Made by a program: the position numbers and the translations under genes. This document shows, piece by piece, positions 1,560-43,379 of a stretch of 46,990 nucleotides of DNA. The notes under the pieces were generated by a model. That model was not told where the DNA came from, did not search any database, and saw only the letters and a list, made by a program, of their open reading frames with translations. Position 1 is the first letter of the stretch. Every line of letters starts with the position of its first letter. This DNA is from Guillardia theta CCMP2712 (lineage: Eukaryota > Protista > Cryptophyta). The stretch lies in the NCBI RefSeq assembly GCF_000315625.1, contig NW_005434585.1:87649-134638 (forward strand), read 5' to 3'.

Positions 1560-8086
<6,527 letters not shown>

Positions 8087-18752: not shown

Positions 18753-20726
18753 TTACGTCGGCTGAGCTGGTCGAGGGAAGGACCCGTAGGAGCTCTGCTG
18801 GGGGGCTGCAGGGATGACGCTCGTGCCTTCGTCCGCATCATCCTCCTCGCCCAAGTGAGCAGTAGTCATCGTCCTCCTGTAGTGCATGAACACAGTGGCG
18901 GTCAGAGCAGAGAAGATGAGCAGCCCGAGGTAGCAGAGCGACGCGCTCCTGTCGAACTGCAGCAGGTAAGAGAGCACGATGGGCACGATGACGTGGGAGG
19001 GGATGGTCGTGACGGCCCAGTAGGCCTGCATCCACGAGACATCCCTTCCCTCTGCTCCAGCCGCGTACACGGATCGAGCGAACACCTCCGAAGCCATGGA
19101 GGAGGCGGGAAAGAGCGCGAAGGCGCAGGTGTAGCAGCCGAGGGCGTACTGCCATGGCGAGAGCTGGCCGAACCAAGGGACGCAGAGGAGCATGCCGAGG
19201 ATGGCGAAGAGGATGCACAGGATCATCAGAGAGCGAGTCGAGAAGTGGCTCTTCATCGGCTGCAGCACCGCCATGCCCACGACCCCAGCTGAGAAGATGC
19301 CCATCATGAAGACAGCCGTCGCGTCGATGGTAAAACCCAGGTAGATCCCAGTGATGGGCGCGACGATGGTCTCGACCGAAGCCAACCAGGTCTGGAAGAG
19401 AAGCTCCATGGCGACGCAGGCGATGATGGGCGTGAGGTGGAGGAGGAAGCGAGGGTTGCTCCTGGGGTTGAAGGAGGAGAGCGGGAGGTTTGGCAGGGGC
19501 AGCTGAAGTTTCTCTCGAGGAAACTCGCTGGGGATGTAACTCCACTCGTGGTAGACGAACGCGAAGGCGAGGGAGCAGATGAGAACCCCGAGGAAGCCGG
19601 GTGCCTGCAGGCCATGGCCGACGATGGCGGTGACGTACTGGGGCATGTACATGCGATGATCGCCGATCTCGTTGGCGATGTCCTGGTCAGTCTTGAGACC
19701 TTTCTGCCCTCCAGCCTCTTCGATCTCTTCCTCTTTGGTGAAGCCTCCCATCCCCAGATCTTTCTGTGTGAGCTTGCCCACCTTGTTCAGCTCCGAAGTC
19801 ATCTTGTGCACATCCTTGCTGAAGTATCTGAACGCTCCTGCCCCAGTCTTGCTCGCGTTCACCACGTTGCTGGTTCCTCTCCGATCCCTCGACCGTCCTT
19901 TCCCGCTGTTCACCGACGGCAAGGCCCGTCGCGCCGGCTCCTCGGAGTCTAGAAGTTTCCTCGCATGACGCGCGGCACCCGCGCCCCCTTCCTCTCTCCG
20001 AACCACCTTCATCAGCGCTGCCTTGGCTGCAGTCTTGGATGCCCCCGGCTGGTCAGGAGGGATCACCAGTCCCCCGAGGGATCCAAAGGAAAGGCGCGAG
20101 TTCACAACGTCCGACACGTTGGGCATGTGCAGCATGTGAACGTACCTGGGCAGAGCATGCTCGATGTGGTTGAAGGGGCCGGGCGCGGGGGTGTGGACGA
20201 AGGTGGCGACTGCCGCCAACCCCGAGCCGAGGATGAAGGCGGCCGAGTACAGCGACTTCATGGCAACCACCGTGTTGTACCGGTCCTCCCTCCTGCAGAT
20301 TCCGCTGGACATGGCGACCAGGGAGCCCTGCACGCCGGCAGCACAGCCCACGAGGAAGCGAGCTGAGAGGATTGCAATGACACTGTGAGCAAGAGCATAG
20401 AAGAGGCTCCCTGTTGCCGCCAGGACGATGGCGAGTAGGCAGAGGTCACGTGCTGAGGTCACGGTGTACAACCAGGAGAAGAGCGGAGCAGTGCAGATGC
20501 TCCCCACGTACGTAGCCGCGATGCAGAACCCGAGCATGGTCGATTCGGCATGGAAGGCTGCAAGGTAGGAGGAGAGGGATGGGAGCACCACCGTCTCAGC
20601 GAAGAACAGCGCAAGAAGGGTCATCATATTCGCTGCTCGTGCCCTTTGGTAGACACTCTCCTCGAAGACGCCATGGCTCTTGGGCTGCAGCGTGTCAGAT
20701 TCAGAGCTGCTGGTATGCGGCTGCAT
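18753..20726 (-). CDS. Major facilitator superfamily transporter, MFSD8/CLN7-like, single exon, 657 aa
   Basis: About 12 hydrophobic segments. N-half LPSLSSYL..LGFCIAA..APLFSW..GSLFYALA..ILSARFLVG, an APGFL helix, and C-half ETIVAPI resemble MFSD8-type proteins. The tail carries an acidic DEGTSVI and YGSF, which look like sorting signals. Confidence 0.85.
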   Translation of the reverse strand: MQPHTSSSESDTLQPKSHGVFEESVYQRARAANMMTLLALFFAETVVLPSLSSYLAAFHAESTMLGFCIAATYVGSICTAPLFSWLYTVTSARDLCLLAIVLAATGSLFYALAHSVIAILSARFLVGCAAGVQGSLVAMSSGICRREDRYNTVVAMKSLYSAAFILGSGLAAVATFVHTPAPGPFNHIEHALPRYVHMLHMPNVSDVVNSRLSFGSLGGLVIPPDQPGASKTAAKAALMKVVRREEGGAGAARHARKLLDSEEPARRALPSVNSGKGRSRDRRGTSNVVNASKTGAGAFRYFSKDVHKMTSELNKVGKLTQKDLGMGGFTKEEEIEEAGGQKGLKTDQDIANEIGDHRMYMPQYVTAIVGHGLQAPGFLGVLICSLAFAFVYHEWSYIPSEFPREKLQLPLPNLPLSSFNPRSNPRFLLHLTPIIACVAMELLFQTWLASVETIVAPITGIYLGFTIDATAVFMMGIFSAGVVGMAVLQPMKSHFSTRSLMILCILFAILGMLLCVPWFGQLSPWQYALGCYTCAFALFPASSMASEVFARSVYAAGAEGRDVSWMQAYWAVTTIPSHVIVPIVLSYLLQFDRSASLCYLGLLIFSALTATVFMHYRRTMTTAHLGEEDDADEGTSVIPAAPQQSSYGSFPRPAQPT

Positions 20727-21540: not shown

Positions 21541-21810
21541 ACGTGCGAATATGCACAGAGAGGAAGGATGAAGAGGGGGGCGGGCAGAGGCGAGCAGAGG
21601 AGGAAGAGACGACAGGAGGATGGAGCAAACGAGCATGAGCAGAGGATGGAAGGGGAGAATGAGACTTGACTGAAGTACAGAGAGAAGAGATGAGGATGTG
21701 GGGGCTGAAATCCTGGCATGAGCAATGCAGAATGAATATAAATTGAATTTGGGGACACAAGTCATGAAATACCCTCTGAGACCTGTTGTGATGGCAGGAA
21801 ACTGTGTGCT

Positions 21811-23517
21811 ATGAATGCTTGTTTGAAATTCCGTCAAGAAGCATTCCTCTGGCTGACAGCTGCAGCGTCGAGAAGCTCAGCAAGCCTTGGGTTGAGCCGC
21901 CCAGGTCCGACTGTTGCGAGGTGAGCGATGATGATGGGAGCGAAGATCGGGCCATGGATGACGTCTGTTGCTCGTCAGATACGTCCAGCAGAAGCAGTTC
22001 CATGCTCCTCCATGGCCTACGATCGCGCATCAACGACGTCTCTGCAGTTCAGGAGCGAAACCAGCGCATGAAGAGGGGGCCGGGGAGAGGAGGTTGAACC
22101 TTGCGAAGAGAGTGCAGGAGTCTGTGTGCAGATCTCTCAGCGTCGAGGGAGGAAACGTCTCTAGAAGGGAGCTGCAGCAGCGAGGATGGAGCCCTCAGCT
22201 GCTGAAACGTCTGTTCAAGAAGAAAGAAGAGATTCCCCTGGGGGAGGTCGAGCAAGGGCTGTCCTTGCTCTGGGCCAGTCATGCGCCCGTGGACTCGTTG
22301 CTGGGCCTGTTCGACAGGACGTGTGAGATACACAAGCATCGCAACGCGTACGGCTACTGGATCGTCGACTCGCTGTATCCCCTGGGAGCCTGGAAGTACG
22401 TCACCTTCAACCAGGTCAGGTACCTGGCGACAGATGTCAGGGACCTGATGTATGAGATGGGAGTGAGGAGGGGAGACCGCGTATCGATCATCTCCAGGAA
22501 CTGCGCGGAGTGGGTTGCGATCTGTGTTGCCGCCTTCTCCCTGAGAGCGACGGTGGTACCGCTGCACGAGTCCCAGCATGAGGAGGACTGGCTGGCAGCG
22601 ATTTCCGACTCTCGGTCCAAGGTTGTGTTTGTCGGGAACGAGGACTTGTATGAGAAGGTGAAGGGGATGAAGGAGAGGAGCAAGACGGACGTGGAGGAGA
22701 TCATCTGCATCGACGGGGTGACAGGCTTCCTGCGGCACAAGGAGTATGCCTTCACTCACCGTCTGAAGAAGATCCGGGATGTAAGGAACAGGGTCTTCTC
22801 GCCCGTGGAGAGATGCGAACCTGATGACGTGGCGTTCCTCCTCTACCAGCATGCGTCTGACGGAGCTCTTCGCCCCCTGCCCCTCTCCCATGCTCAAGTC
22901 GTCTGCTCAGTGCTGGAGCGCAGCCTGTCCTGCTCGTTCTCGCGCTCCGAGGTCTCGATGAGCTTCCTGTCATGGTCAGAGCCTGCTGGACTCGTCCTCG
23001 AGCTGTTCTGCATGATGGAGAGTGGGGGAGCGATTGCTATGAGCGAGGGCAGAACGAAGTTTCGGTACAACTGCCAGGAGGTGAAGCCGTCTGTGATGTT
23101 CACCAGGTATGAGCTGATGAATGTTGAGCTGTGGTGATGGGGGTTGGAGATGTTGATGATTGAGATGATGGAGCTGATAAACACAATAACAAAGATGACA
23201 ATAATGGTTGGTAGATGATGATGGTGATGGTGATGGTGATGGTGATGGTGATGGTGATGGTGATTATGATAACCATTATGATGGTGGTGGTGGTGGTGAT
23301 GATGATGATGATGATGATGATGGTGACGGTGATAGTGCTGCTGCTGCTGCTGCTTCTGGTTTCAACATTAGCAATGACGTCCACGACAGGGGAGATTGTC
23401 TTGAAATCATACATGAATCGGTTATGAGAGATTCGGAAGAGTTGGTCTATAAGTTTACAGTTCCCTGGGCACTGGAAGCCTACGAACGAGAAATGAGGGT
23501 CAGTTACTGCTGCTGCT

Positions 23518-23550
<33 letters not shown>

Positions 23551-23583
23551 GATGATGATGGCGATGATGATGATGATGATGGC

Positions 23584-23614
<31 letters not shown>

Positions 23615-25008
23615 GTGATGATGATAACTCTGTTTATAGTTCTACTATCTCTCCTTCCTCTTCCTCTCTTGACTCTTGCTTTTGCAGGGGACTCCAAACT
23701 TTGTTCATCGCATCTACCAGCGCCTCCTACAGAGATTTGTCTGCAGACCTCTCAGGAAACTTCTAGGGAAGAAGCTCACGAGAATTTACTGTGTGGGAGA
23801 TATCAGTTCAAGGTGATCGTGATTGTTTTTACGATTGATTGTGGTGATGAGATGTTGATGGTGGTGATGGGGGAGAAGGAGGAGGTGGAGGAAGAAATGA
23901 TGACGACGATAATGATGTGAACAATGATATGAGATCATTCAAACCATGATGGTGCAGATGGTGTTAACGTCTTAAAGACGTCTGGGGTCTGACTAGTTCC
24001 TCGTGCTGTAGGTCAAAGATCATGATGGAGGCGCTGGGAGTTCAGATCGTGATCGTTAAGTCCTCTACCGTGCTCCCCATCCCCTTCCTGGCCAAGTCTC
24101 TTCCTCAAGTTGACGTCTTCCACCCGCTCGCTGGCGTCGAGGTCAGCTCCCCTCCTCTGCTTCCTCTGTCTCTCTCTTCTGTCACTTATACGGATCCTTG
24201 TCTCAGCTGGTTCGGCCTCCTCCCCGCCCCCCTCCCCCCCTCTCCCTCCTCTCCTCTTCATCTCCTCCCTCCGTCCTTTCCCTCCTCTCTTCTTCCTCCA
24301 TCCCCCTCCTAACGTGAGAACCATCAGTTATCTGCGGAGGAGGACGCGGATCAAGTAGCTCCTCGCATCTCCATCTCCACCGCCTTGGGTACCTTCCTCT
24401 CCTCCTCCCTGTGCCTGCATGACGAGGGAGCAGCANNNNNNNNNNNNNNNNNNNNNNNNNNNNNNNNNNNNNNNNNNNNNNNNNNNNNNNNNNNNNNNNN
24501 NNNNNNNNNNNNNNNNNNNNNNNNNNNNNNNNNNNAGTGCTCCTGCTCTCCTCTCCTCTCCTCTCCTCTCCTCTCCTCTCCTCTCCTCTCCTCTCCTCTC
24601 CTCTCCTCTCCTCTCCTCTCCTCTCCTCTCCTCTCCTCTCCTCTCCTCTCCTCTCCTCTCCTCTCCTCTCCTCTCCTCTCCTCTCCTCTCCTCTCCTCTC
24701 CTCTCCTCTCCTCTCCTCTCCTCTCCTCCTGATATCTTGTCACAGCTCCTGTCCGATCATGCGGTCAGATTGCTCGGGAACGTAGACAGTGAGTTCTCCC
24801 TCAAGGGAGGTCCGGCGGTCAACCCTGAGCATGTGAGATTACAAGCTCTCGTCTCGCTAGCGCTGATGACGTCATGCCGTCAGATCGAATCTCATCTCAA
24901 GTCCAAGGATCTCATCAGACATGCTTTCGTTTACGGAGAAGACCAGGTCTGTTCGCATTGCTCCATCTCCTGCTCCATCTCCTGCTCCTGCTCCTGCTCC
25001 TGCTCCAT

Positions 25009-25043
<35 letters not shown>

Positions 25044-25996
25044 TCTCGTGCTCGTGCTCGTGCTCCTCCTTCTCCTCCTTCTCCTGCCCGTCTCACTGCA
25101 TGTGTCAGGAATTTTGTGTCGCCCTTATTGTCCCAGAGTTCGTCCTGCTCCAAGAGACGCTTGCTCATCGGCTGGGGGATGAAAGGTTTCGACCTTCTCC
25201 CCCTCCTCTCCTCGCTGACATGCAAGCAGGGAATATTCCTCCTTCCAGCTCATTGCTGGTAACGTCAACATCTCCACATCTCACCCCATACTTGTCTGAG
25301 CTACCTGATGCCCATCTCCGCACCTCTTCTTCAGTTGTAACGTTGTTGACGTCCCGCCGCTGCTTCTCTCTTTTCTCACATCACATCTTTGCTCCTCCCC
25401 TTTGCTCTACCCCGCTGCTCTTGAGCTGACGACATGGCGGCAGATGACTCTCTGAGAGCTCTTGTCACCAAGGAGATCGAGGATTGTCTCGGCAGCTTGC
25501 AGTCGATCGTGAAAGATCAGCGGGCCATCCCCAAGAAGTTTGTCGTCCTTGACAGACCGTTCTCAATCGAGGTACGAAAGTCCTCCCTCCCTCCCTCCCT
25601 NNNNNNNNNNNNNNNNNNNNNNNNNNNNNNNNNNNNNNNNNNNNNNNNNNNNNNNNNNNNNNNNNNNNNNNNNNNNNNNNNNNNNNNNNNNNNNNNNNNN
25701 TTCCCTCCCTCCCTCCCTCCCCTCCTCCCTTCGTCCTACCCCTCCCTCCCTTCCTCTCTCTCTCTCCTCCTCCCTTCCTCTCTCGCTTCATCCTCATCTC
25801 TTTTCCTCTCTCCTTCTCCTTCTCCTGCCCCTCCCTCCCTCCCTTCTCCCCTTGTCAGTCTGCTCGTCTGCTCTAGTCTCTTGGTCCTCCCTCACGTCAA
25901 CACCAGGAGGGCTCACTCACTCCCATGCTGGAGCTGCGAAGGAACAAGATCGTCGAGCTGTACGCTCAGACCATTCAATCTTTGTATCAACAATAA
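21811..25996 (+). CDS. Long-chain acyl-CoA synthetase (AMP-binding, FadD15/ACSL-like) homolog with degenerate catalytic motifs and a putative mitochondrial presequence
   Basis: ORF 21968-23137 contains WKYVTFNQV..MGVRRGDRVSIISRNCAEW..TVVPLH..DSRSKVVFV..SFLSWS..QEVKPSVM. Later exons give GGPAVNPEHIESHL..AFVYGEDQEFCVALIVP..PKKFVVLDRPFSIEEGSLTPMLELRRNKIVELYAQTIQSLY, stop TAA 25994-25996. Start could be 21791 or 21811. Two N gaps fall inside the locus. Confidence 0.8.
23140..23635. repeat. (GAT)n/(GGTGAT)n microsatellites in two introns of the acyl-CoA-synthetase-like gene
   Basis: Runs at about 23215-23330 and 23520-23625 flank a short exon at about 23389-23498. Confidence 0.85.
24436..24535. 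other. Assembly gap (100 N)
   Basis: Run of N, adjacent to a (CTCTC)n array. Confidence 1.
24546..24730. repeat. (CTCTC)n pentamer microsatellite, intronic
   Basis: Perfect pentamer run ending just before an acceptor near 24745. Confidence 0.9.
25601..25700. other. Assembly gap (100 N)
   Basis: Run of N within a (CCCT)n intron. Confidence 1.
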
Positions 25997-39502: not shown

Positions 39503-42500
39503 CTAAACTTGCTCCTTCAGTTGCTGCATAAACCTCCTCTGCATCGATGGTCAGCTCGGTGGCGGTGGCAAAGCACGAGTACCTGAAGAAGGATGCGCTG
39601 TTCCTCGTACTGGTAGATCAAGTCTCCGACGAAGTCGTCGCGGTCAAGGAGAGGCACCTGAGAAGATTGAGCCAAGGAGGGAGGCAGGGTGGCGGAAGGG
39701 ATTGAAGGAGGAATTGTATGGAAAGGAAAGCAGGGAGGAAGGGAGAGGGAAAGGAGAAAGGGAGGGAGGGAGGAGCTTACTTCAAGGTATTCCTCATACT
39801 TGTTGTCTGCTGCAGACTGGATCGCCTGCTCCTCGTTGTCGCCCCCGGTGTACGCGGGCTGCACGAGAGACTTGATCTGCTTCATGAGGTACTCGACCTT
39901 CCTCTCCAGCTCCTGGATCACTGCTGCCTTCTTGTGCGAGTCCTCAGCCAACCTGTTCTTGTGCGTCTCCTCCTTCGCCAGCTTCTCCCTGAGCTCCCTG
40001 AGCTCATAGCTCGCACTGGGATGAAAGGAATCCTCATCTTCTCTGTGCCTGTTCCCGTTGGTCACCTCCGTGTGCTCTAGAGCTCTGGACCCCTTGCTGA
40101 GCTGCAGTCGGGACTGGAGCTCTAGCGCCTCCTCCCTGTGCTTGGCCGCCAAGTCGAGTCGCTCCTGCACCTGCTGCCAGCTCTTCTCTCGCGTCTTCCT
40201 GCCGCCCTCAGCAAGGGACCTCAGCTGCGAGCACATGTCCGCGAGCACGTCCTTGGACGCGGATTCTGTGTTCTGCAGCGATAAGAGTCAGACATGACGA
40301 CAAGGGCGGGGAGGGGAAGAGGGAGGGAGAGAAGAGAGGGGGAAGAAGGTGGGTGGGTTGGAGGAAGGAAGGGGAGATAAGTATAAGAGAGACAAGGGAG
40401 GAGAGAAGATAGAAGCAGAGGAAAGGGAAGAGGGAAGCGGTTTCAGAGGATGAGAGGAGGGGAGAGGCGGTGTTGGAGCAACAAGGAAGGAGCGGTTACG
40501 ACCTGGATGATATCGAGCAGCATGTCATTCTGAGCCTCTTTCTCGGCAATCTGACTCTGCAGATCCTTCAAGGCCTCCCTCTGTGCCATGGCCGTCTCTT
40601 GGAGCTCTCCCATGCACTTGTCAGACAGGGCGCACTGCTGCTCTAGCTCGAGGATCGTCTTCCGCTGGTTCTCCACCTCCCGCTCCTTCATCACCATCAT
40701 GCTCGATTGCTTCGACATGGACTGGCGCAGGGAGTTCAGCTCTGCCGACGAGCCTCCGCTGGACCCCTGCGACTTCCTGAGCTCGCTCTGCATTCGCTGC
40801 ATCTGCAGCCGCTGAGTGTTGTTCTCCTGCTTCATCCTCTGCAGGTCCTCCCGCAGGTTTGCGTTGATCTCTCGTAGCTCCTCCGCGCTCTCCGAGCTCT
40901 GCTGCCCCTGCTTGCCGTGCAGGCCCCGAGAGCTGGTCGGGGAGGGAGTCCCGTCGATCAGGTCCTCCAGCGTCAGCTTGTCTTCCTCCAGCCGAAGGAT
41001 CCTGTTCTCTAGCTCGTGCCTCTCCTCCAGCAGCCTCGCGGAGGCCTTCCTCTCCGCTGCGAGCTGCTCGTCCTTCTTGTTCAGCTCCTCCACCAGGTCC
41101 ATCAGCTGGTCCTCCAGCAGCTTGACATCGTCCTGGTCCACTTTATGGTTGAGCGACTCGTGCAGCTGCTGGTTCTCCGAGCTCAGCACGTTGATGACCT
41201 TCTTGTGGTCGCTGACCTGGTTGTGCAGGTCCTTGAGGATGTTGTTCAGACCCTTCTCCTTGAGGTCCCGGCTGCGCAGGGACGTCTCAAGGCTGTTGAA
41301 GTCCTTCTGAAGCTCGTCGAGCATCTGCAGGTCGTTCTTCATGTCCGCCACCAGCTGCCCTATGATGTTGTCCTCGATCTTCAGCTCCTCCTTCACCGCC
41401 TTCAGCACTTGATTCAGCAGCATCAGGTGCTTCCCCTCGTCGGCCACAGTCCTCCCCTCCTCGATCGCCTTGCAGAACTCCTGCACCTCCCTCTCCTTCT
41501 CCGCGCTCTCCTTGTTCGCCTCCGTTACCTGCTTGTTGATCGACTCGAGCTTGCAGTTCAGCCGATCTTGCAGGTCCGTCACGTGAGTCTTCACCTTCCC
41601 AAAGACTTTCCTGGCGTCCTCGATCCCGTGCGCGGACAGCTTCGTGTCTGCCGCAGCATCTCTCCTCTTCGTCTTGTACCGGATCGGGGTCTTGTTATTC
41701 ACGGCCGACCTGCTCACGCTGTCCAAGTCGACGATCATGCTCTCGTACCTCTCGATCTTCTGCAGGAGGACAGTCCTCATCTCCTCCACCTGCCCCTTCT
41801 CGTGCTCCAGCTCCTCCTGCTGTTGCATGTTCAGCTGTTCCAGCCTCTCCTTCTCCCCCCGCAGGTTCTCTATCTCGTCTCTGTACTTCTTCAGCAGCGG
41901 GAGGTCCTCCGCACTCAACGACCCGCTCACATTCACATCATTCAGGATCGGCTTGTTCTTCATCCTCTTCGCCCGGGCCGCAAACTTCAGCGTGTTCATC
42001 GACTCGGGGAAGTGCTGGGCTGCCGGGGTGATGGTGCAGATGATGGCTGTCCTTGAGTTGCCCCCCAGCGCTGGCTCCAGGATCCTAGTCAGCTTGCTGT
42101 CTCGGTACGGAATGTGCCCACTGGCCGTGATGAGCCGTTGGATCACCGTTGCCAGCGTCAAGAGACTCTTGTTGATGTAGGACCCCTCCGTCCTCCTCTG
42201 CCCCACCCCTCCCGACTTAGACGCGCTCTCGGACCCCGCCAGGTCCACCAGGTTCAGCGAGCTGACTCGGTACTCGGGGCCGCTGGCGGAGTGGACCTCC
42301 TTCAGCTTGCTCTCGATGACGAGGCGGAAGATGGTGTGGGAGCGCGAGCTCTTCTCGTTCATGTCGGTGCTTCCCACGGACCTGTGCGTCTCCCCCATGG
42401 AGATCGTCGTCATGACTTCGGCCGCTGACGTCACCACCTTCTCTGTAACCCCGAGGATCTTGACAACGCTCGACCCATCGCTGCTTCTGATCTGGAGGCC

Positions 42501-43379
42501 AGTCTTGGTGGGGTCGAGGAGGTCAATCACGACCTCGTTGTAGATCTCGATGTAGCTCAGGCGGAAGAAGAACTCGCGATCGGGATACGATTTCACGTGC
42601 GAGAAGACCTCTTGAGTAGCAAGAGGAATCACACCAGGCGATGATCGTGCGCCAGACATGGTGAACGTCTTGCCACTTGACGTCTGCCCGTAAGCAAAGA
42701 TGCAACCGTTGTATCCTTCCACCGTCGACTGCACAATCTCTGACAGGACCTGCTTGTAGATCTGATCCGTTGTGACCATAGGGGGGAAGATATTATCGAA
42801 GGTGAAGGTGGAGCCTTCATAGATGTCCCCTGCTGGCGTCCCCAACTGTGGAGCGATGCTCCGAGAGTCATATCGCCAGCACATCTGATTTTGATTCGAC
42901 TCGTCTCTGGTCTTGTCTCCTCCCACAACGTCCAGCGGCCTGACTCGGACACAGACAGCCACAGCCGCCTTGTCCCTGCCCTTCCCTCGCACTCCGTTGC
43001 CGATGCTGTTCCGCACGCTGGAGACGGAGCTGAGCGACAAGTTTTGGATGTCAAGTTGACTGGTATCGTCAGAGTTCTCCCTCTCGAGCGTGACAGAGTT
43101 GCGGAGAGACGGAGAGGGAGGACGGAGGACGCTGTTGCCAGCCCCCTTCCTAGGGGGCGAATCGCCTCGCGGGCTTCCATTGCGGTTGCTCACGTTGGAG
43201 AGAGTGAGAGAAGTCCGTACGTTGCTGTTCCTGCTCCTCAACGGAGAGTTCAGACTTCGACTCTGATCGCTGAGGTCGTACGTCCGACGGAGAGCTCGTT
43301 GCTTCCCGTCCTCAGGAAGGGGAAAGGCGTTCATCGGGGAGGACGGCCGCTTCGGTTCCTTCATTGTGTTAATACTCAT
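39503..43379 (-). CDS. Kinesin-7 family (CENP-E-like) motor protein, 4 exons: 43379-40503, 40272-39781, 39657-39583, 39538-39503
   Basis: Motor motifs VCVRVRP, FAYGQTSSGKTFTM, SYIEIYNE, STDMNEKSSRSHTIFRLVIES, LNLVDLAGSE and [32 protein letters not shown] are typical of kinesin-7. Ser/Arg-rich N-terminal extension and long coiled-coil stalk. All three introns are GT-AG, phase 0, with TAG at 39503-39505. Confidence 0.92.

What the first reader, a model, noticed from the sequence alone, without database searches (positions are those of the whole stretch)
21811..25996. Probable mitochondrial pseudo-enzyme: full-length acyl-CoA synthetase fold with three catalytic motifs replaced
Seen: the phosphate-binding loop region (about 22823-22895) reads DDVAFLLYQHASDGALRPLPLSH where active ANL enzymes have D(D/T)xAxIxYTSGTTGxPKGVxLTH. 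The hinge motif I(T/I)GRxK reads LLGNVD. The C-terminal LTPTLKLKR with its catalytic Lys reads LTPMLELRR. Yet a 390-codon exon stays open, splice sites look intact and the domain runs to its normal C-terminus. The N-terminus is Arg/Ser/Ala-rich, poor in acidic residues, and ends in RRLCSS. Established: these motifs are required for adenylation in the ANL superfamily. Inference: a retained, catalytically dead structural or lipid-binding mitochondrial protein. Acyl-CoA-synthetase-like accessory subunits have been described in some protist respiratory complex I structures, so a scaffold role is one hypothesis. The TGD motif region could not be assessed because it lies near an N gap.
Basis: partly seen in the sequence, partly recalled or inferred. 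Interest (0 to 1): 0.72.

Follow-up and report, generated by a model that had tools for sequence, protein, structure and literature searches.

The report
Dead acyl-CoA synthetase-like gene, Guillardia
This is an expressed, spliced nuclear gene of the cryptophyte alga Guillardia theta, kept by selection, that encodes a long-chain acyl-CoA-synthetase-like protein without the residues needed to activate fatty acids; it belongs to a small undescribed clade of such "dead" enzymes whose role is unknown.

Summary
Window 21811-25996 (+) is a 13-or-more-exon gene of Guillardia theta CCMP2712, mis-modelled in GenBank as hypothetical protein XP_005824893.1. Exon 2 is a clear AMP-binding domain (PF00501, E 3e-25). 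Against 54 canonical long-chain acyl-CoA synthetases, the P-loop (A3), the A4 histidine, the GYGxTE motif (A5), the hinge arginine (A8) and the catalytic lysine (A10) are all replaced.

It is not a decaying pseudogene:
- cDNA contigs from two runs remove five GT..AG introns exactly.
- dN/dS against a 97%-identical Guillardia strain is 0.11 (p = 2.5e-8).
- Relatives with equally degenerate motifs exist in Hanusia, Rhodomonas and environmental protists. They form one clade with a shared 6-residue insertion and an N-terminal helical extension.

Gaps:
- Gap 1 (24436-24535) hides at least one exon, the TGD region. The transcript continues with letters absent from the whole assembly.
- Gap 2 is most likely intronic.

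Mitochondrial targeting fits the Arg/Ser/Ala-rich N-termini but was not tested. I found no support for a complex I scaffold role. Best reading: a conserved non-adenylating pseudo-enzyme, a new variant of a known kind, of moderate interest.

The parts
21811..21920 (+). Exon 1: start codon and first 36 codons of the basic, acid-poor N-terminal extension (putative presequence)
   Evidence: cDNA contig X2 record 9 covers 21797-21918 and joins to 21977 across a GT..AG intron. Homologous to the Hanusia N-terminus MNNCLKFRHEAFLWLTAAAS. Frame checked.
21979..23106 (+). Exon 2 (1128 nt): end of presequence, family-specific helical extension, and the N-terminal two thirds of the AMP-binding domain. It holds the insertion YGYWIVDSLYPLGAWK, the degenerate P-loop (22823-22891) and the degenerate A4 motif.
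   Evidence: PF00501 E 3.3e-25. cDNA contigs X1 and X2 cover it fully with no differences. dN/dS 0.11 against strain contig L001. Motif columns.
23390..23498 (+).
   Evidence: cDNA contigs join 23103->23387 across a GT..AG intron. 85% identical to Hanusia P0002 residues 444-482.
23688..23812 (+). Exon 4 (125 nt): region equivalent to the canonical ...R..GGRLR...SGGA segment; reads LRKLLGKKLTRIYCVGDISS
   Evidence: Contiguous in cDNA records X1-2 and X2-9 (table 8). In frame.
24012..24141 (+). Exon 5 (130 nt): degenerate A5 region (canonical EGYGLTE reads IVIVKSSTV) and the start of the A6 region
   Evidence: cDNA joint 23810->24010 across a GT..AG intron. Alignment columns.
24328..24388 (+). 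Exon 6 (61 nt), skipped by the GenBank model: LSAEEDADQVAPRISISTAL; ends in phase 1
   Evidence: cDNA joint 24139->24326 across a GT..AG intron in two runs. Both contigs then leave the window sequence at 24388.
24436..24535 (+). Assembly gap 1, hiding at least one exon. The expected content is the A7 'TGD' region, and the length must be 2 mod 3. Its first ten codons read ATSEATASGL.
   Evidence: Loose ends of 255 nt or more in X1 and X2 after 24388 share one 30-nt consensus. That 30-mer is absent from the whole assembly at up to 2 mismatches. Translation and phase arithmetic.
24746..24832 (+). Exon 8 (87 nt): degenerate hinge/A8, LLSDHAVRLLGNVDSEFSLKGGPAVNPEH (canonical ITGRIKEQYKLENGKYV)
   Evidence: AG/GT borders; only this frame is open. 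Aligns with Rhodomonas VRVTGRADHCFKLACGTEV. Present in GenBank model P0154. No reads laid.
24884..24946 (+). Exon 9 (63 nt): IESHLKSKDLIRHAFVYGEDQ (C-terminal domain)
   Evidence: AG/GT borders, open frame. Weak PF23562 hit on P0154 residues 541-582 (20.2 bits, just under the cutoff of 20.8). In model P0154.
25109..25185 (+). Exon 10 (77 nt): EFCVALIVPEFVLLQETLAHRLGDE
   Evidence: AG/GT borders, open frame. Aligns with Rhodomonas CSVALVVPDYEKLQEAQKKRLGHE.
25230..25258 (+). Exon 11 (29 nt): (R)EYSSFQLIA
   Evidence: AG/GT borders, phase-consistent. In model P0154. Corresponds to Rhodomonas EQTEKQLLD.
25444..25571 (+). Exon 12 (128 nt): DDSLRALVTKEIEDCL...KKFVVLDRPFSIE
   Evidence: AG/GT borders, open frame. 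In model P0154.
25601..25700 (+). Assembly gap 2, inside the last intron (CT-rich low complexity on both sides)
   Evidence: Exons 12 and 13 join in phase 0 and reproduce the canonical spacing of the PFS.E..LTP motif. Tandem repeats flank the gap.
25907..25996 (+). Exon 13 (last; 29 codons plus TAA): EGSLTPMLELRRNKIVELYAQTIQSLYQQ; the A10 catalytic Lys position is Glu
   Evidence: AG acceptor, open to TAA at 25994-25996. Aligns with canonical LTPxLKLKR. The GenBank model misses this exon and ends ...SIESARLL.

Best explanation
The locus is a single-copy nuclear gene of Guillardia theta CCMP2712. It encodes a protein of about 735 residues with the full two-domain fold of a long-chain acyl-CoA synthetase (ANL superfamily).

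The residues that bind ATP and catalyse acyl-adenylate formation are replaced: the P-loop/A3, the A5 Thr-Glu, the A8 Arg and the A10 Lys. The protein therefore most likely cannot adenylate fatty acids. It is kept for a non-catalytic role carried mainly by its N-terminal half. That half holds a family-specific helical extension, a 6-residue insertion (YWI.D.LYP) and other family-invariant residues.

Its basic, acid-poor N-terminus makes a mitochondrial matrix or inner-membrane location the most likely one.

Shown: gene structure, expression, splicing, motif loss, purifying selection, clade membership. Inferred: loss of activity, location, and a binding or scaffold role.
For: Identity and fold:
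- PF00501 on exon 2, E 3.3e-25. The window is G. theta; the GenBank model P0154 matches the window's letters.
- AlphaFold model of the Rhodomonas orthologue: pLDDT 86.5, pTM 0.86, with both domains, a well-modelled helical extension at residues 57-144 and a disordered 1-52. Foldseek best hits are all ANL enzymes at E about 1e-28.

Motif loss against 54 canonical sequences:
- A3 YTSGTTGxPKG reads YQHASDGALRP.
- A4 LPWAH reads LSWSE.
- A5 EGYGLTE reads IVIVKSS.
- A8 TGRIK reads LGNVD.
- A10 TPxLK reads TPMLE.
- PF00501 scores are eroded: 54-135 bits in the clade against 271 bits for a canonical relative.

Not a pseudogene:
- Two cDNA contigs from different runs and studies splice out five GT..AG introns with zero mismatches. 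About half the words of the stretch are held in runs of five or more studies, as expected for exons only.
- There are 554 and 157 stop-free codons on the two sides of gap 1.
- dN/dS is 0.11 (8 non-synonymous, 21 synonymous changes; binomial p = 2.5e-8) against a 97%-identical strain contig that includes the introns.

Conservation:
- Hanusia phi is 68% identical with the same dead P-loop.
- The same applies to Rhodomonas lens, R. abbreviata, Tara Oceans scaffolds and other environmental contigs.
- The clade is monophyletic, SH-aLRT 99. The gene is single-copy in the genome.
- Paralogues on contigs C70, C120 and C45 keep an intact P-loop, and the two whose matches reach the C-terminus (C70, C120) also keep GYGMTE, HTGD, IDRKK and TPTLKLRR.

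Location:
- The N-terminus has net charge +7 and one acidic residue in 62. The maximum 11-residue hydropathy is 1.06, too low for a signal peptide.
- The N-termini of relatives are likewise Arg-rich.
Against: - No activity, binding or localisation data exist.
- The A7 TGD region of this protein is unread (gap 1). The Rhodomonas orthologue keeps STGD and GRAD, so some nucleotide or CoA contact cannot be excluded for the family.
- One clade member (P0009) keeps a near-canonical P-loop with PKG.
- The only Hanusia transcript on record is aberrant. It uses an internal acceptor, retains an intron and ends in a shifted frame.
- dN/dS rests on one exon and 29 substitutions.
- The mitochondrial reading rests on composition only.
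Confidence: 0.68

Rival explanations
1. It is a divergent but still catalytic ANL-fold enzyme. It might bind nucleotide or CoA through non-canonical residues, or carry out only a partial or different reaction such as thioester chemistry or acyl transfer.
For: - The whole two-domain fold is kept at high model confidence.
- Selection is strong.
- Relatives retain TGD and GRxD, and in P0009 a PKG-containing P-loop.
- The TGD region of this protein is unread.
Against: - Four or five independent catalytic motifs are replaced at once. These include both the P-loop Lys and the A10 Lys, and the Thr-Glu of A5.
- From established knowledge of ANL enzymes, each of these alone strongly reduces adenylation.
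- The replacing residues differ between clade members, and one Rhodomonas isoform deletes 13 residues over the P-loop. That is the pattern of relaxed constraint on those sites, not of a new active site.
Confidence: 0.12
2. It is a structural accessory subunit of a mitochondrial membrane complex. The reader suggested respiratory complex I; a mitoribosome or another complex is also conceivable. On this reading an enzyme fold was recruited as a scaffold. This is a special case of the best explanation.
For: - Dead enzyme folds are recruited into protist respiratory complexes. Euglena complex I carries PEPCK-like and MDR/TER-like subunits (PMC10884005).
- The family has a conserved extra N-terminal helical domain and surface-type invariant residues in the N-terminal half.
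- The N-terminus is presequence-like.
Against: - No paper or solved structure with an ACS-like subunit in such a complex was found.
- The clade is very patchy and rare: a handful of clusters among 1.84 billion representatives. That is unusual for a core complex subunit.
- No transmembrane segment was noticed.
Confidence: 0.08
3. It is a young pseudogene that is still transcribed. The open frames and splice sites simply have not decayed yet.
For: - The catalytic motifs are gone.
- The Hanusia transcript is mis-spliced and truncated.
- The GenBank model is fragmentary.
Against: - dN/dS is 0.11 with p = 2.5e-8, while introns in the same contig diverge at least as fast as synonymous sites.
- There are about 711 readable codons over 12 exons without a stop.
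- Motif loss predates the Guillardia/Hanusia/Rhodomonas split, yet the protein stays 35-68% identical with family-specific invariant residues.
Confidence: 0.03
4. The protein is not mitochondrial. It acts in the cytosol, the plastid or the periplastidial compartment of the cryptophyte.
For: - No targeting predictor was run.
- Cryptophyte plastid and periplastidial proteins also carry Ser/Ala/Arg-rich transit-peptide-like regions.
- Residues 10-20 (EAFLWLTAAAS) are mildly hydrophobic.
Against: - The hydrophobic stretch is short and weak (mean hydropathy 1.06) and preceded by Glu, so it is unlike a signal peptide.
- The Rhodomonas, Tara and MMETSP relatives have Arg-rich N-termini without any hydrophobic core.
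Confidence: 0.25

Closest known systems
Canonical long-chain acyl-CoA synthetases (EC 6.2.1.3) of the roughly 600-aa 'FadD15-like' type, including protist forms with presequence-like N-termini (for example P0011, P0014 and the Triparma fragment P0153)
   Same: PF00501 plus an AMP-binding_C_3 type C-terminal domain, the same domain order, about 27% identity, and alignable motif positions A1-A10 including the C-terminal LTPxLKxxR box.
   Different: - All adenylation motifs are replaced.
- A 6-residue insertion follows the first conserved Gly.
- A helical extension of about 70-90 residues sits upstream.
- The stem branch is long, in a separate clade.
Guillardia theta's own LACS paralogues (contigs C70, C120, C45, C121, C156 and others)
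   Same: Same genome and same superfamily.
   Different: The paralogues checked keep YTSGTTGxPKG, and C70 and C120 also keep GYGMTE, HTGD, IDRKK and TPTLKLRR. The window gene keeps none of those it can be read for.
GenBank record XP_005824893.1 / GUITHDRAFT_144609, 'hypothetical protein' (UniRef: AMP-dependent synthetase/ligase domain-containing protein)
   Same: It is the same locus, and most internal exons are identical.
   Different: The model starts upstream in a wrong frame. It skips exon 24328-24388 and the hidden exon. It ends at ...SIESARLL instead of the true last exon carrying LTPMLELRR. No functional note exists.
Thermus thermophilus LC-FACS (1ULT/1V26) and M. tuberculosis FadD13 (3R44): solved structures of the fold
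   Same: The predicted fold superposes on them: Foldseek E about 1e-26 to 1e-28, TM by target 0.68-0.74. Sequence profile hits have E 3.5e-16 to 4e-06.
   Different: These are active enzymes with an intact P-loop, TGD and A10 Lys, and they lack the N-terminal extension.
Enzyme-derived accessory subunits of protist respiratory complexes (Euglena complex I PEPCK-like and TER/MDR-like subunits, PMC10884005)
   Same: Only the concept: an enzyme fold kept for a structural role in mitochondria.
   Different: The folds differ. No ACS-like subunit is reported there, and no evidence links this protein to any complex.

Membership tests
ANL superfamily (Pfam PF00501 AMP-binding fold) | Significant match to the PF00501 profile above the gathering score | tested here: met
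   Exon 2 scores 89.1 bits (cutoff 29.9), E 3.3e-25. The Rhodomonas orthologue scores 135 bits.
ANL superfamily (Pfam PF00501 AMP-binding fold) | Two-domain architecture: a large N-terminal domain plus a small C-terminal lid domain | tested here: met
   The AF2 model of orthologue P0155 has pLDDT 86.5 with both domains. Foldseek hits are ANL enzymes over 600+ columns. PF23562 passes on P0155 (26.6 bits); on the G. theta model it reaches 20.2 bits, just under the cutoff of 20.8.
Active long-chain acyl-CoA synthetase (EC 6.2.1.3) | A3 / P-loop (T/S)SG(T/S)TGxPKG | tested here: not met
   Reads QHASDGALRP; neither the Thr/Ser-Gly pattern nor the Lys is kept.
Active long-chain acyl-CoA synthetase (EC 6.2.1.3) | A5 GYGxTE (adenine stacking Tyr; Thr-Glu for Mg/ATP) | tested here: not met
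   Reads IVIVKSSTV in exon 24012-24141.
Active long-chain acyl-CoA synthetase (EC 6.2.1.3) | A7 (Y/H/R)TGD, the ribose-binding Asp | not testable with these tools
   It lies in the exon hidden in assembly gap 1. Only the first ten codons (ATSEATASGL) are known from loose ends. The Rhodomonas orthologue keeps STGD.
Active long-chain acyl-CoA synthetase (EC 6.2.1.3) | A8 hinge (I/L)xGRxK/D | tested here: not met
   Reads LLGNVD. The Arg is Asn and the acidic/basic position is Asp. This is a partial resemblance only.
Active long-chain acyl-CoA synthetase (EC 6.2.1.3) | A10 catalytic Lys in the C-terminal TPxxK box | tested here: not met
   Reads TPMLE, so Lys is replaced by Glu.
Active long-chain acyl-CoA synthetase (EC 6.2.1.3) | Acyl-CoA forming activity | not testable with these tools
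   Needs a biochemical assay.
The 'dead LACS-like' clade defined here (Guillardia, Hanusia, Rhodomonas, environmental protists) | Insertion (F/Y)GYWI(M/V)D(T/S)LYP(L/M)GxWK and an N-terminal helical extension with the GW.P motif | tested here: met
   Present in the window protein and all clade members, absent from 54 canonical sequences.
The 'dead LACS-like' clade defined here (Guillardia, Hanusia, Rhodomonas, environmental protists) | Monophyly against canonical LACS | tested here: met
   SH-aLRT 99 for the six-member clade, LG+G4, 599 columns. This was a quick search only, without bootstrap.
Mitochondrial presequence-bearing proteins | N-terminal Arg-rich, acid-poor, amphipathic cleavable presequence recognised by a trained predictor or shown experimentally | tested here: inconclusive
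   Composition fits: +7 net charge, one acidic residue in 62, no signal-peptide-grade hydrophobic core. The orthologue's residues 1-52 are disordered. No predictor or localisation data were available.

The most novel reading that the evidence does not exclude
The clade is a previously undescribed, lineage-restricted structural or regulatory subunit of a mitochondrial membrane complex (respiratory chain, mitoribosome or import/lipid machinery) in cryptophytes and some uncultured protists. It was built by recruiting a dead acyl-CoA synthetase fold and adding a docking helix bundle at its N-terminus.
Probability: 0.1. Interest if true: 0.75.

Novelty: new variant of a known kind. Interest (0 to 1): 0.45.

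Why it matters
Pseudo-enzymes are common, but I found no described catalytically dead branch of the long-chain acyl-CoA synthetases. This one is expressed, under clear purifying selection, and conserved across at least three cryptophyte genera and several uncultured marine and freshwater protists. It has its own added domain, so it must do something other than activate fatty acids.

It gives a concrete target for complexome or proteome work on cryptophyte mitochondria, and for asking how ANL folds are repurposed.

Practically, the public gene model of this locus is wrong at both ends. It also misses exons, one of which is lost in an assembly gap.

Tried and rejected
- The raw-read RNA run X22 gave only 4 reads, all in an intron, from 6% of the run. 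This is uninformative.
- The word-indexed protein search with the family alignment and with a Tara member returned almost only generic bacterial ligases or the query's own clusters. No full-length cDNA-derived Guillardia protein is in that collection, so the hidden exon could not be read.
- The 30-nt start of the hidden exon is absent from the assembly.
- The metagenome scan found seven more family loci but no Hanusia or Guillardia cDNA.
- The ESM Atlas look-up gave only generic AMP-binding clusters.
- Paper searches for ACS-like subunits of complex I or supercomplexes, for ANL pseudo-enzymes and for Guillardia ACS found nothing relevant.
- PDB sequence and fold searches gave only ordinary ANL enzymes.
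- The first tree run with the mixture model did not finish. The LG+G4 quick tree was used instead.
- The taxon of the Tara, ENA and JGI members could not be established.
Searches used exon 2 by reference and database proteins. Exon joining was done only in local scripts to check frames and stops.
- Earlier scan notes near this place were unrelated.

Full report
**What is there**

The window is part of Guillardia theta CCMP2712 (G000 contig C89). The GenBank protein XP_005824893.1 (GUITHDRAFT_144609, 'hypothetical protein', 655 aa, here P0154) carries the window's own letters.

The stretch 21811-25996 (+) is one multi-exon gene. Exon 2 (21979-23106) alone matches Pfam PF00501 (AMP-binding) at E 3.3e-25. 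It also matches many NCBIfam long-chain-fatty-acid-CoA ligase models, all far below their cutoffs.

**Gene model and expression**

Laying public runs on 21750-24435 gave two contigs from different runs, samples and studies (X1 record 2, 2362 nt; X2 record 9, 2140 nt). They match the window without a single difference.
- They skip 21921-21978, 23107-23389, 23813-24011 and 24142-24327, each listed as a GT..AG joint.
- By their contiguous record coordinates they also skip 23499-23687, whose joint row was dropped at a repeat.

These contigs are therefore cDNA: the gene is transcribed and correctly spliced. Several further runs from other studies hold about half of the stretch's words, which is the exonic share. 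A third run (X15) covers introns and looks like genomic DNA.

With the borders set on GT/AG, the exons are:
- 21811-21920
- 21979-23106
- 23390-23498
- 23688-23812
- 24012-24141
- 24328-24388
- one or more exons hidden in gap 1
- 24746-24832
- 24884-24946
- 25109-25185
- 25230-25258
- 25444-25571
- 25907-25996 (stop TAA)

The upstream block gives 554 codons without a stop and ends in phase 1. The downstream block is 474 nt, that is 157 codons plus the stop.

The 3' exons rest on four things: GT/AG borders, open frames (only one frame of exon 24746-24832 is open), the GenBank model, and homology to the complete Rhodomonas lens orthologue and to canonical enzymes. The tool refuses the perfect 183-nt (CTCTC)n array at 24546-24728, and only one call was allowed.

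**The two gaps**

Gap 1 (24436-24535):
- After exon 24328-24388 both cDNA contigs continue for at least 255 nt with letters that do not lie on 24389-24435.
- Their common first 30 letters are found nowhere in the 87.1 Mb assembly at up to two mismatches.
- Gap 1 therefore hides at least one exon.
- Its first ten codons read ATSEATASGL. Its total length must be 2 mod 3 for the frame to continue into 24746.
- By alignment with Rhodomonas it should hold about 20-25 codons including the A7 'TGD' position.
It is not near the gap but inside it.

Gap 2 (25601-25700):
- It sits between exons that join in phase 0.
- Together they give PFSIE|EGSLTPMLELRR, the exact spacing of canonical PFSQENQMLTPKMSLRR.
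- It is most likely purely intronic.

**The motifs**

In an alignment with 54 canonical long-chain acyl-CoA synthetases, the positions that are 90% or more conserved there read as follows in this protein.

| Motif | Canonical | This protein |
|---|---|---|
| A3 | YTSGTTGxPKG | YQHASDGALRP |
| A4 | LPWAH | LSWSE |
| A5 | EGYGLTE | IVIVKSS |
| A8 | ITGRIK | LLGNVD |
| A10 | LTPxLKLKR | LTPMLELRR |

From established knowledge of ANL enzymes:
- The P-loop binds the ATP phosphates.
- The A5 Thr-Glu and the A7 Asp hold Mg-ATP and the ribose.
- The A10 Lys is the catalytic residue of adenylation.

Losing several of these at once makes adenylation very unlikely. This is an inference, not a measurement.

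The same genome holds several further LACS-like loci. In the three checked (C70, C120, C45) the P-loop YTSGTTGxPKG is intact, and C70 and C120 also keep GYGMTE, HTGD, IDRKK and TPTLKLRR.

**Not a decaying pseudogene**

A Logan contig of a 97%-identical Guillardia strain (L001, 1466 nt, genomic, spanning introns) allowed a Nei-Gojobori count over exon 2.
- There are 8 non-synonymous and 21 synonymous differences.
- dN = 0.0093, dS = 0.086, dN/dS = 0.11. It is 0.075 without the presequence part.
- Binomial p = 2.5e-8 against neutrality.
- Intron positions in the same contig differ at least as often and carry indels.

The gene is single-copy in the genome.

**A conserved dead clade**

An exhaustive HMMER search of 1.84 billion representatives found thousands of AMP-binding proteins but only a handful of close relatives.
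- Hanusia phi is 68% identical.
- Rhodomonas lens is 37% identical, with two isoforms of 720 and 733 aa.
- A Rhodomonas abbreviata fragment.
- An MMETSP transcript of unknown species (P0009, 875 aa).
- Several clusters from Tara Oceans and other metagenomes.

A pattern scan of JGI/ENA metagenome contigs added seven loci.

All share features that canonical enzymes lack:
- An extension of about 70-90 residues before the domain, with a conserved GW.P motif.
- A six-residue insertion giving GYWI(M/V)D(T/S)LYP(L/M)GxWK.
- Motifs such as CIDGxDG, ALTHxL and DVSMSFLPWSE.

All have degenerate P-loops, with different residues in each lineage. One Rhodomonas isoform simply lacks 13 residues there. P0009 keeps the most, YSAGAGGGSPKG. 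Rhodomonas and P0009 keep (T/L)GD and GRxD. That is why I cannot say that every nucleotide contact is lost in the family.

In an LG+G4 quick tree of 60 sequences the six clade members form one group (SH-aLRT 99) on a long stem. Pfam scores of the domain are eroded, at 54-135 bits against 271 for a canonical relative. Family-invariant residues concentrate in the N-terminal half.

**Structure**

AlphaFold2 was run on the complete Rhodomonas orthologue with the 60-sequence alignment.
- pLDDT is 86.5 and pTM 0.86.
- Both ANL domains are modelled.
- The extra helical bundle at residues 57-144 is modelled with confidence.
- The first 52 residues are disordered.

Foldseek against the PDB returns only ordinary ANL enzymes: carboxylic acid reductase A domains, FadD13, aryl-CoA ligases, luciferase and acetyl-CoA synthetase. 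A family profile against all PDB sequences does the same. No chain of a respiratory complex or ribosome appears.

**Location**

The first 62 residues hold 9 Ala, 7 Ser, 6 Arg and one acidic residue, for a net charge of +7. The most hydrophobic 11-residue stretch has mean hydropathy 1.06, too weak for the signal peptide that cryptophyte plastid and periplastid proteins need. Relatives have Arg-rich N-termini too. Mitochondrial import is the best guess, about 0.55-0.6, but it is untested.

**The complex I idea**

Searches for ACS-like accessory subunits found nothing. The Euglena respirasome paper describes the extra domain of complex I as PEPCK-like plus MDR/TER-like subunits (PMC10884005). Recruitment of dead enzymes into protist complexes is real as a concept. 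For this protein it is speculation.

**Verdict**

The interpretation 'retained, catalytically dead' is well supported by motifs, expression, selection and clade conservation. 'Mitochondrial' is plausible. 'Scaffold of complex I' is unsupported.

The protein is an ANL-fold member that fails the membership test for an active long-chain acyl-CoA synthetase on four of the five motifs that can be read. I file it as a new variant of a known kind: a small, undescribed clade of LACS-like pseudo-enzymes with an added N-terminal domain.

Exon 2 was searched by reference, and database proteins (P0154, P0155 and others) were used for the rest. Exon joining was done only in local scripts, for frame checks.

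Noticed in passing
window 21700-25996 compared with GenBank model P0154: The public model XP_005824893.1 is wrong in four ways. It starts upstream in another frame (MQNEYKLNLG...ECLFEIPS...). It skips exon 24328-24388 and the exon hidden in gap 1. It misses the true last exon, ending ...SIESARLL instead of ...EGSLTPMLELRR...YQQ.
   Followed up: yes
Hanusia phi transcript P0002, residues 478-519; window 23744-23824: The only Hanusia transcript on record seems to use an internal acceptor (equivalent to window ...tgtctgcag|acc). It then retains the next intron, so its tail is the +1 frame of exon 4 followed by intron read-through. Whether this is an assembly or processing artefact or a real truncated isoform is open.
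   Followed up: partly
Rhodomonas lens P0005 versus P0155: Two MMETSP isoforms differ only by 13 residues (39 nt) removed exactly over the former P-loop: FYT[AGGGSTPPRPVEL]SH against FYTSH. This suggests the loop is dispensable.
   Followed up: no
window 23209-23337, 23520-23625, 24546-24728, 24959-25087, 25702-25826: Nearly every intron of this gene is filled with microsatellites: (GAT)n, (TGGTGA)n, a perfect (CTCTC)x36.6 of 183 nt, (TGCTCC)n and CT-rich arrays. Both assembly gaps abut such arrays, which probably caused them.
   Followed up: partly
P0088 (Logan contig, 595 aa): The sister of the dead clade in the tree (SH-aLRT 96) is an otherwise canonical ligase of unknown origin. Its P-loop is also degenerate (YAPGSGGTLEG) and its A4 His is Leu, while GLTE, HTGD and GRID are kept. 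This may be a second, independent partial loss, or long-branch attraction.
   Followed up: no
window 18756-20726 (-), 3040-5631 (+), 40446-43379 (-): Neighbouring long ORFs are: an MFS transporter-like exon directly upstream on the other strand (PF07690, E 9e-10), a protein with four IQ calmodulin-binding motifs, and a kinesin motor (PF00225, E 4e-103). No link to the finding is apparent.
   Followed up: partly
L010 (ENA marine metagenome contig, 9973 nt), ORFs 3899-4558 and 4123-5322: An environmental family member whose P-loop region carries an insertion as well as substitutions (YSLGSTRFARRGTGGVPRRVPVTH). Its gene is split over two frames, presumably by an intron.
   Followed up: no
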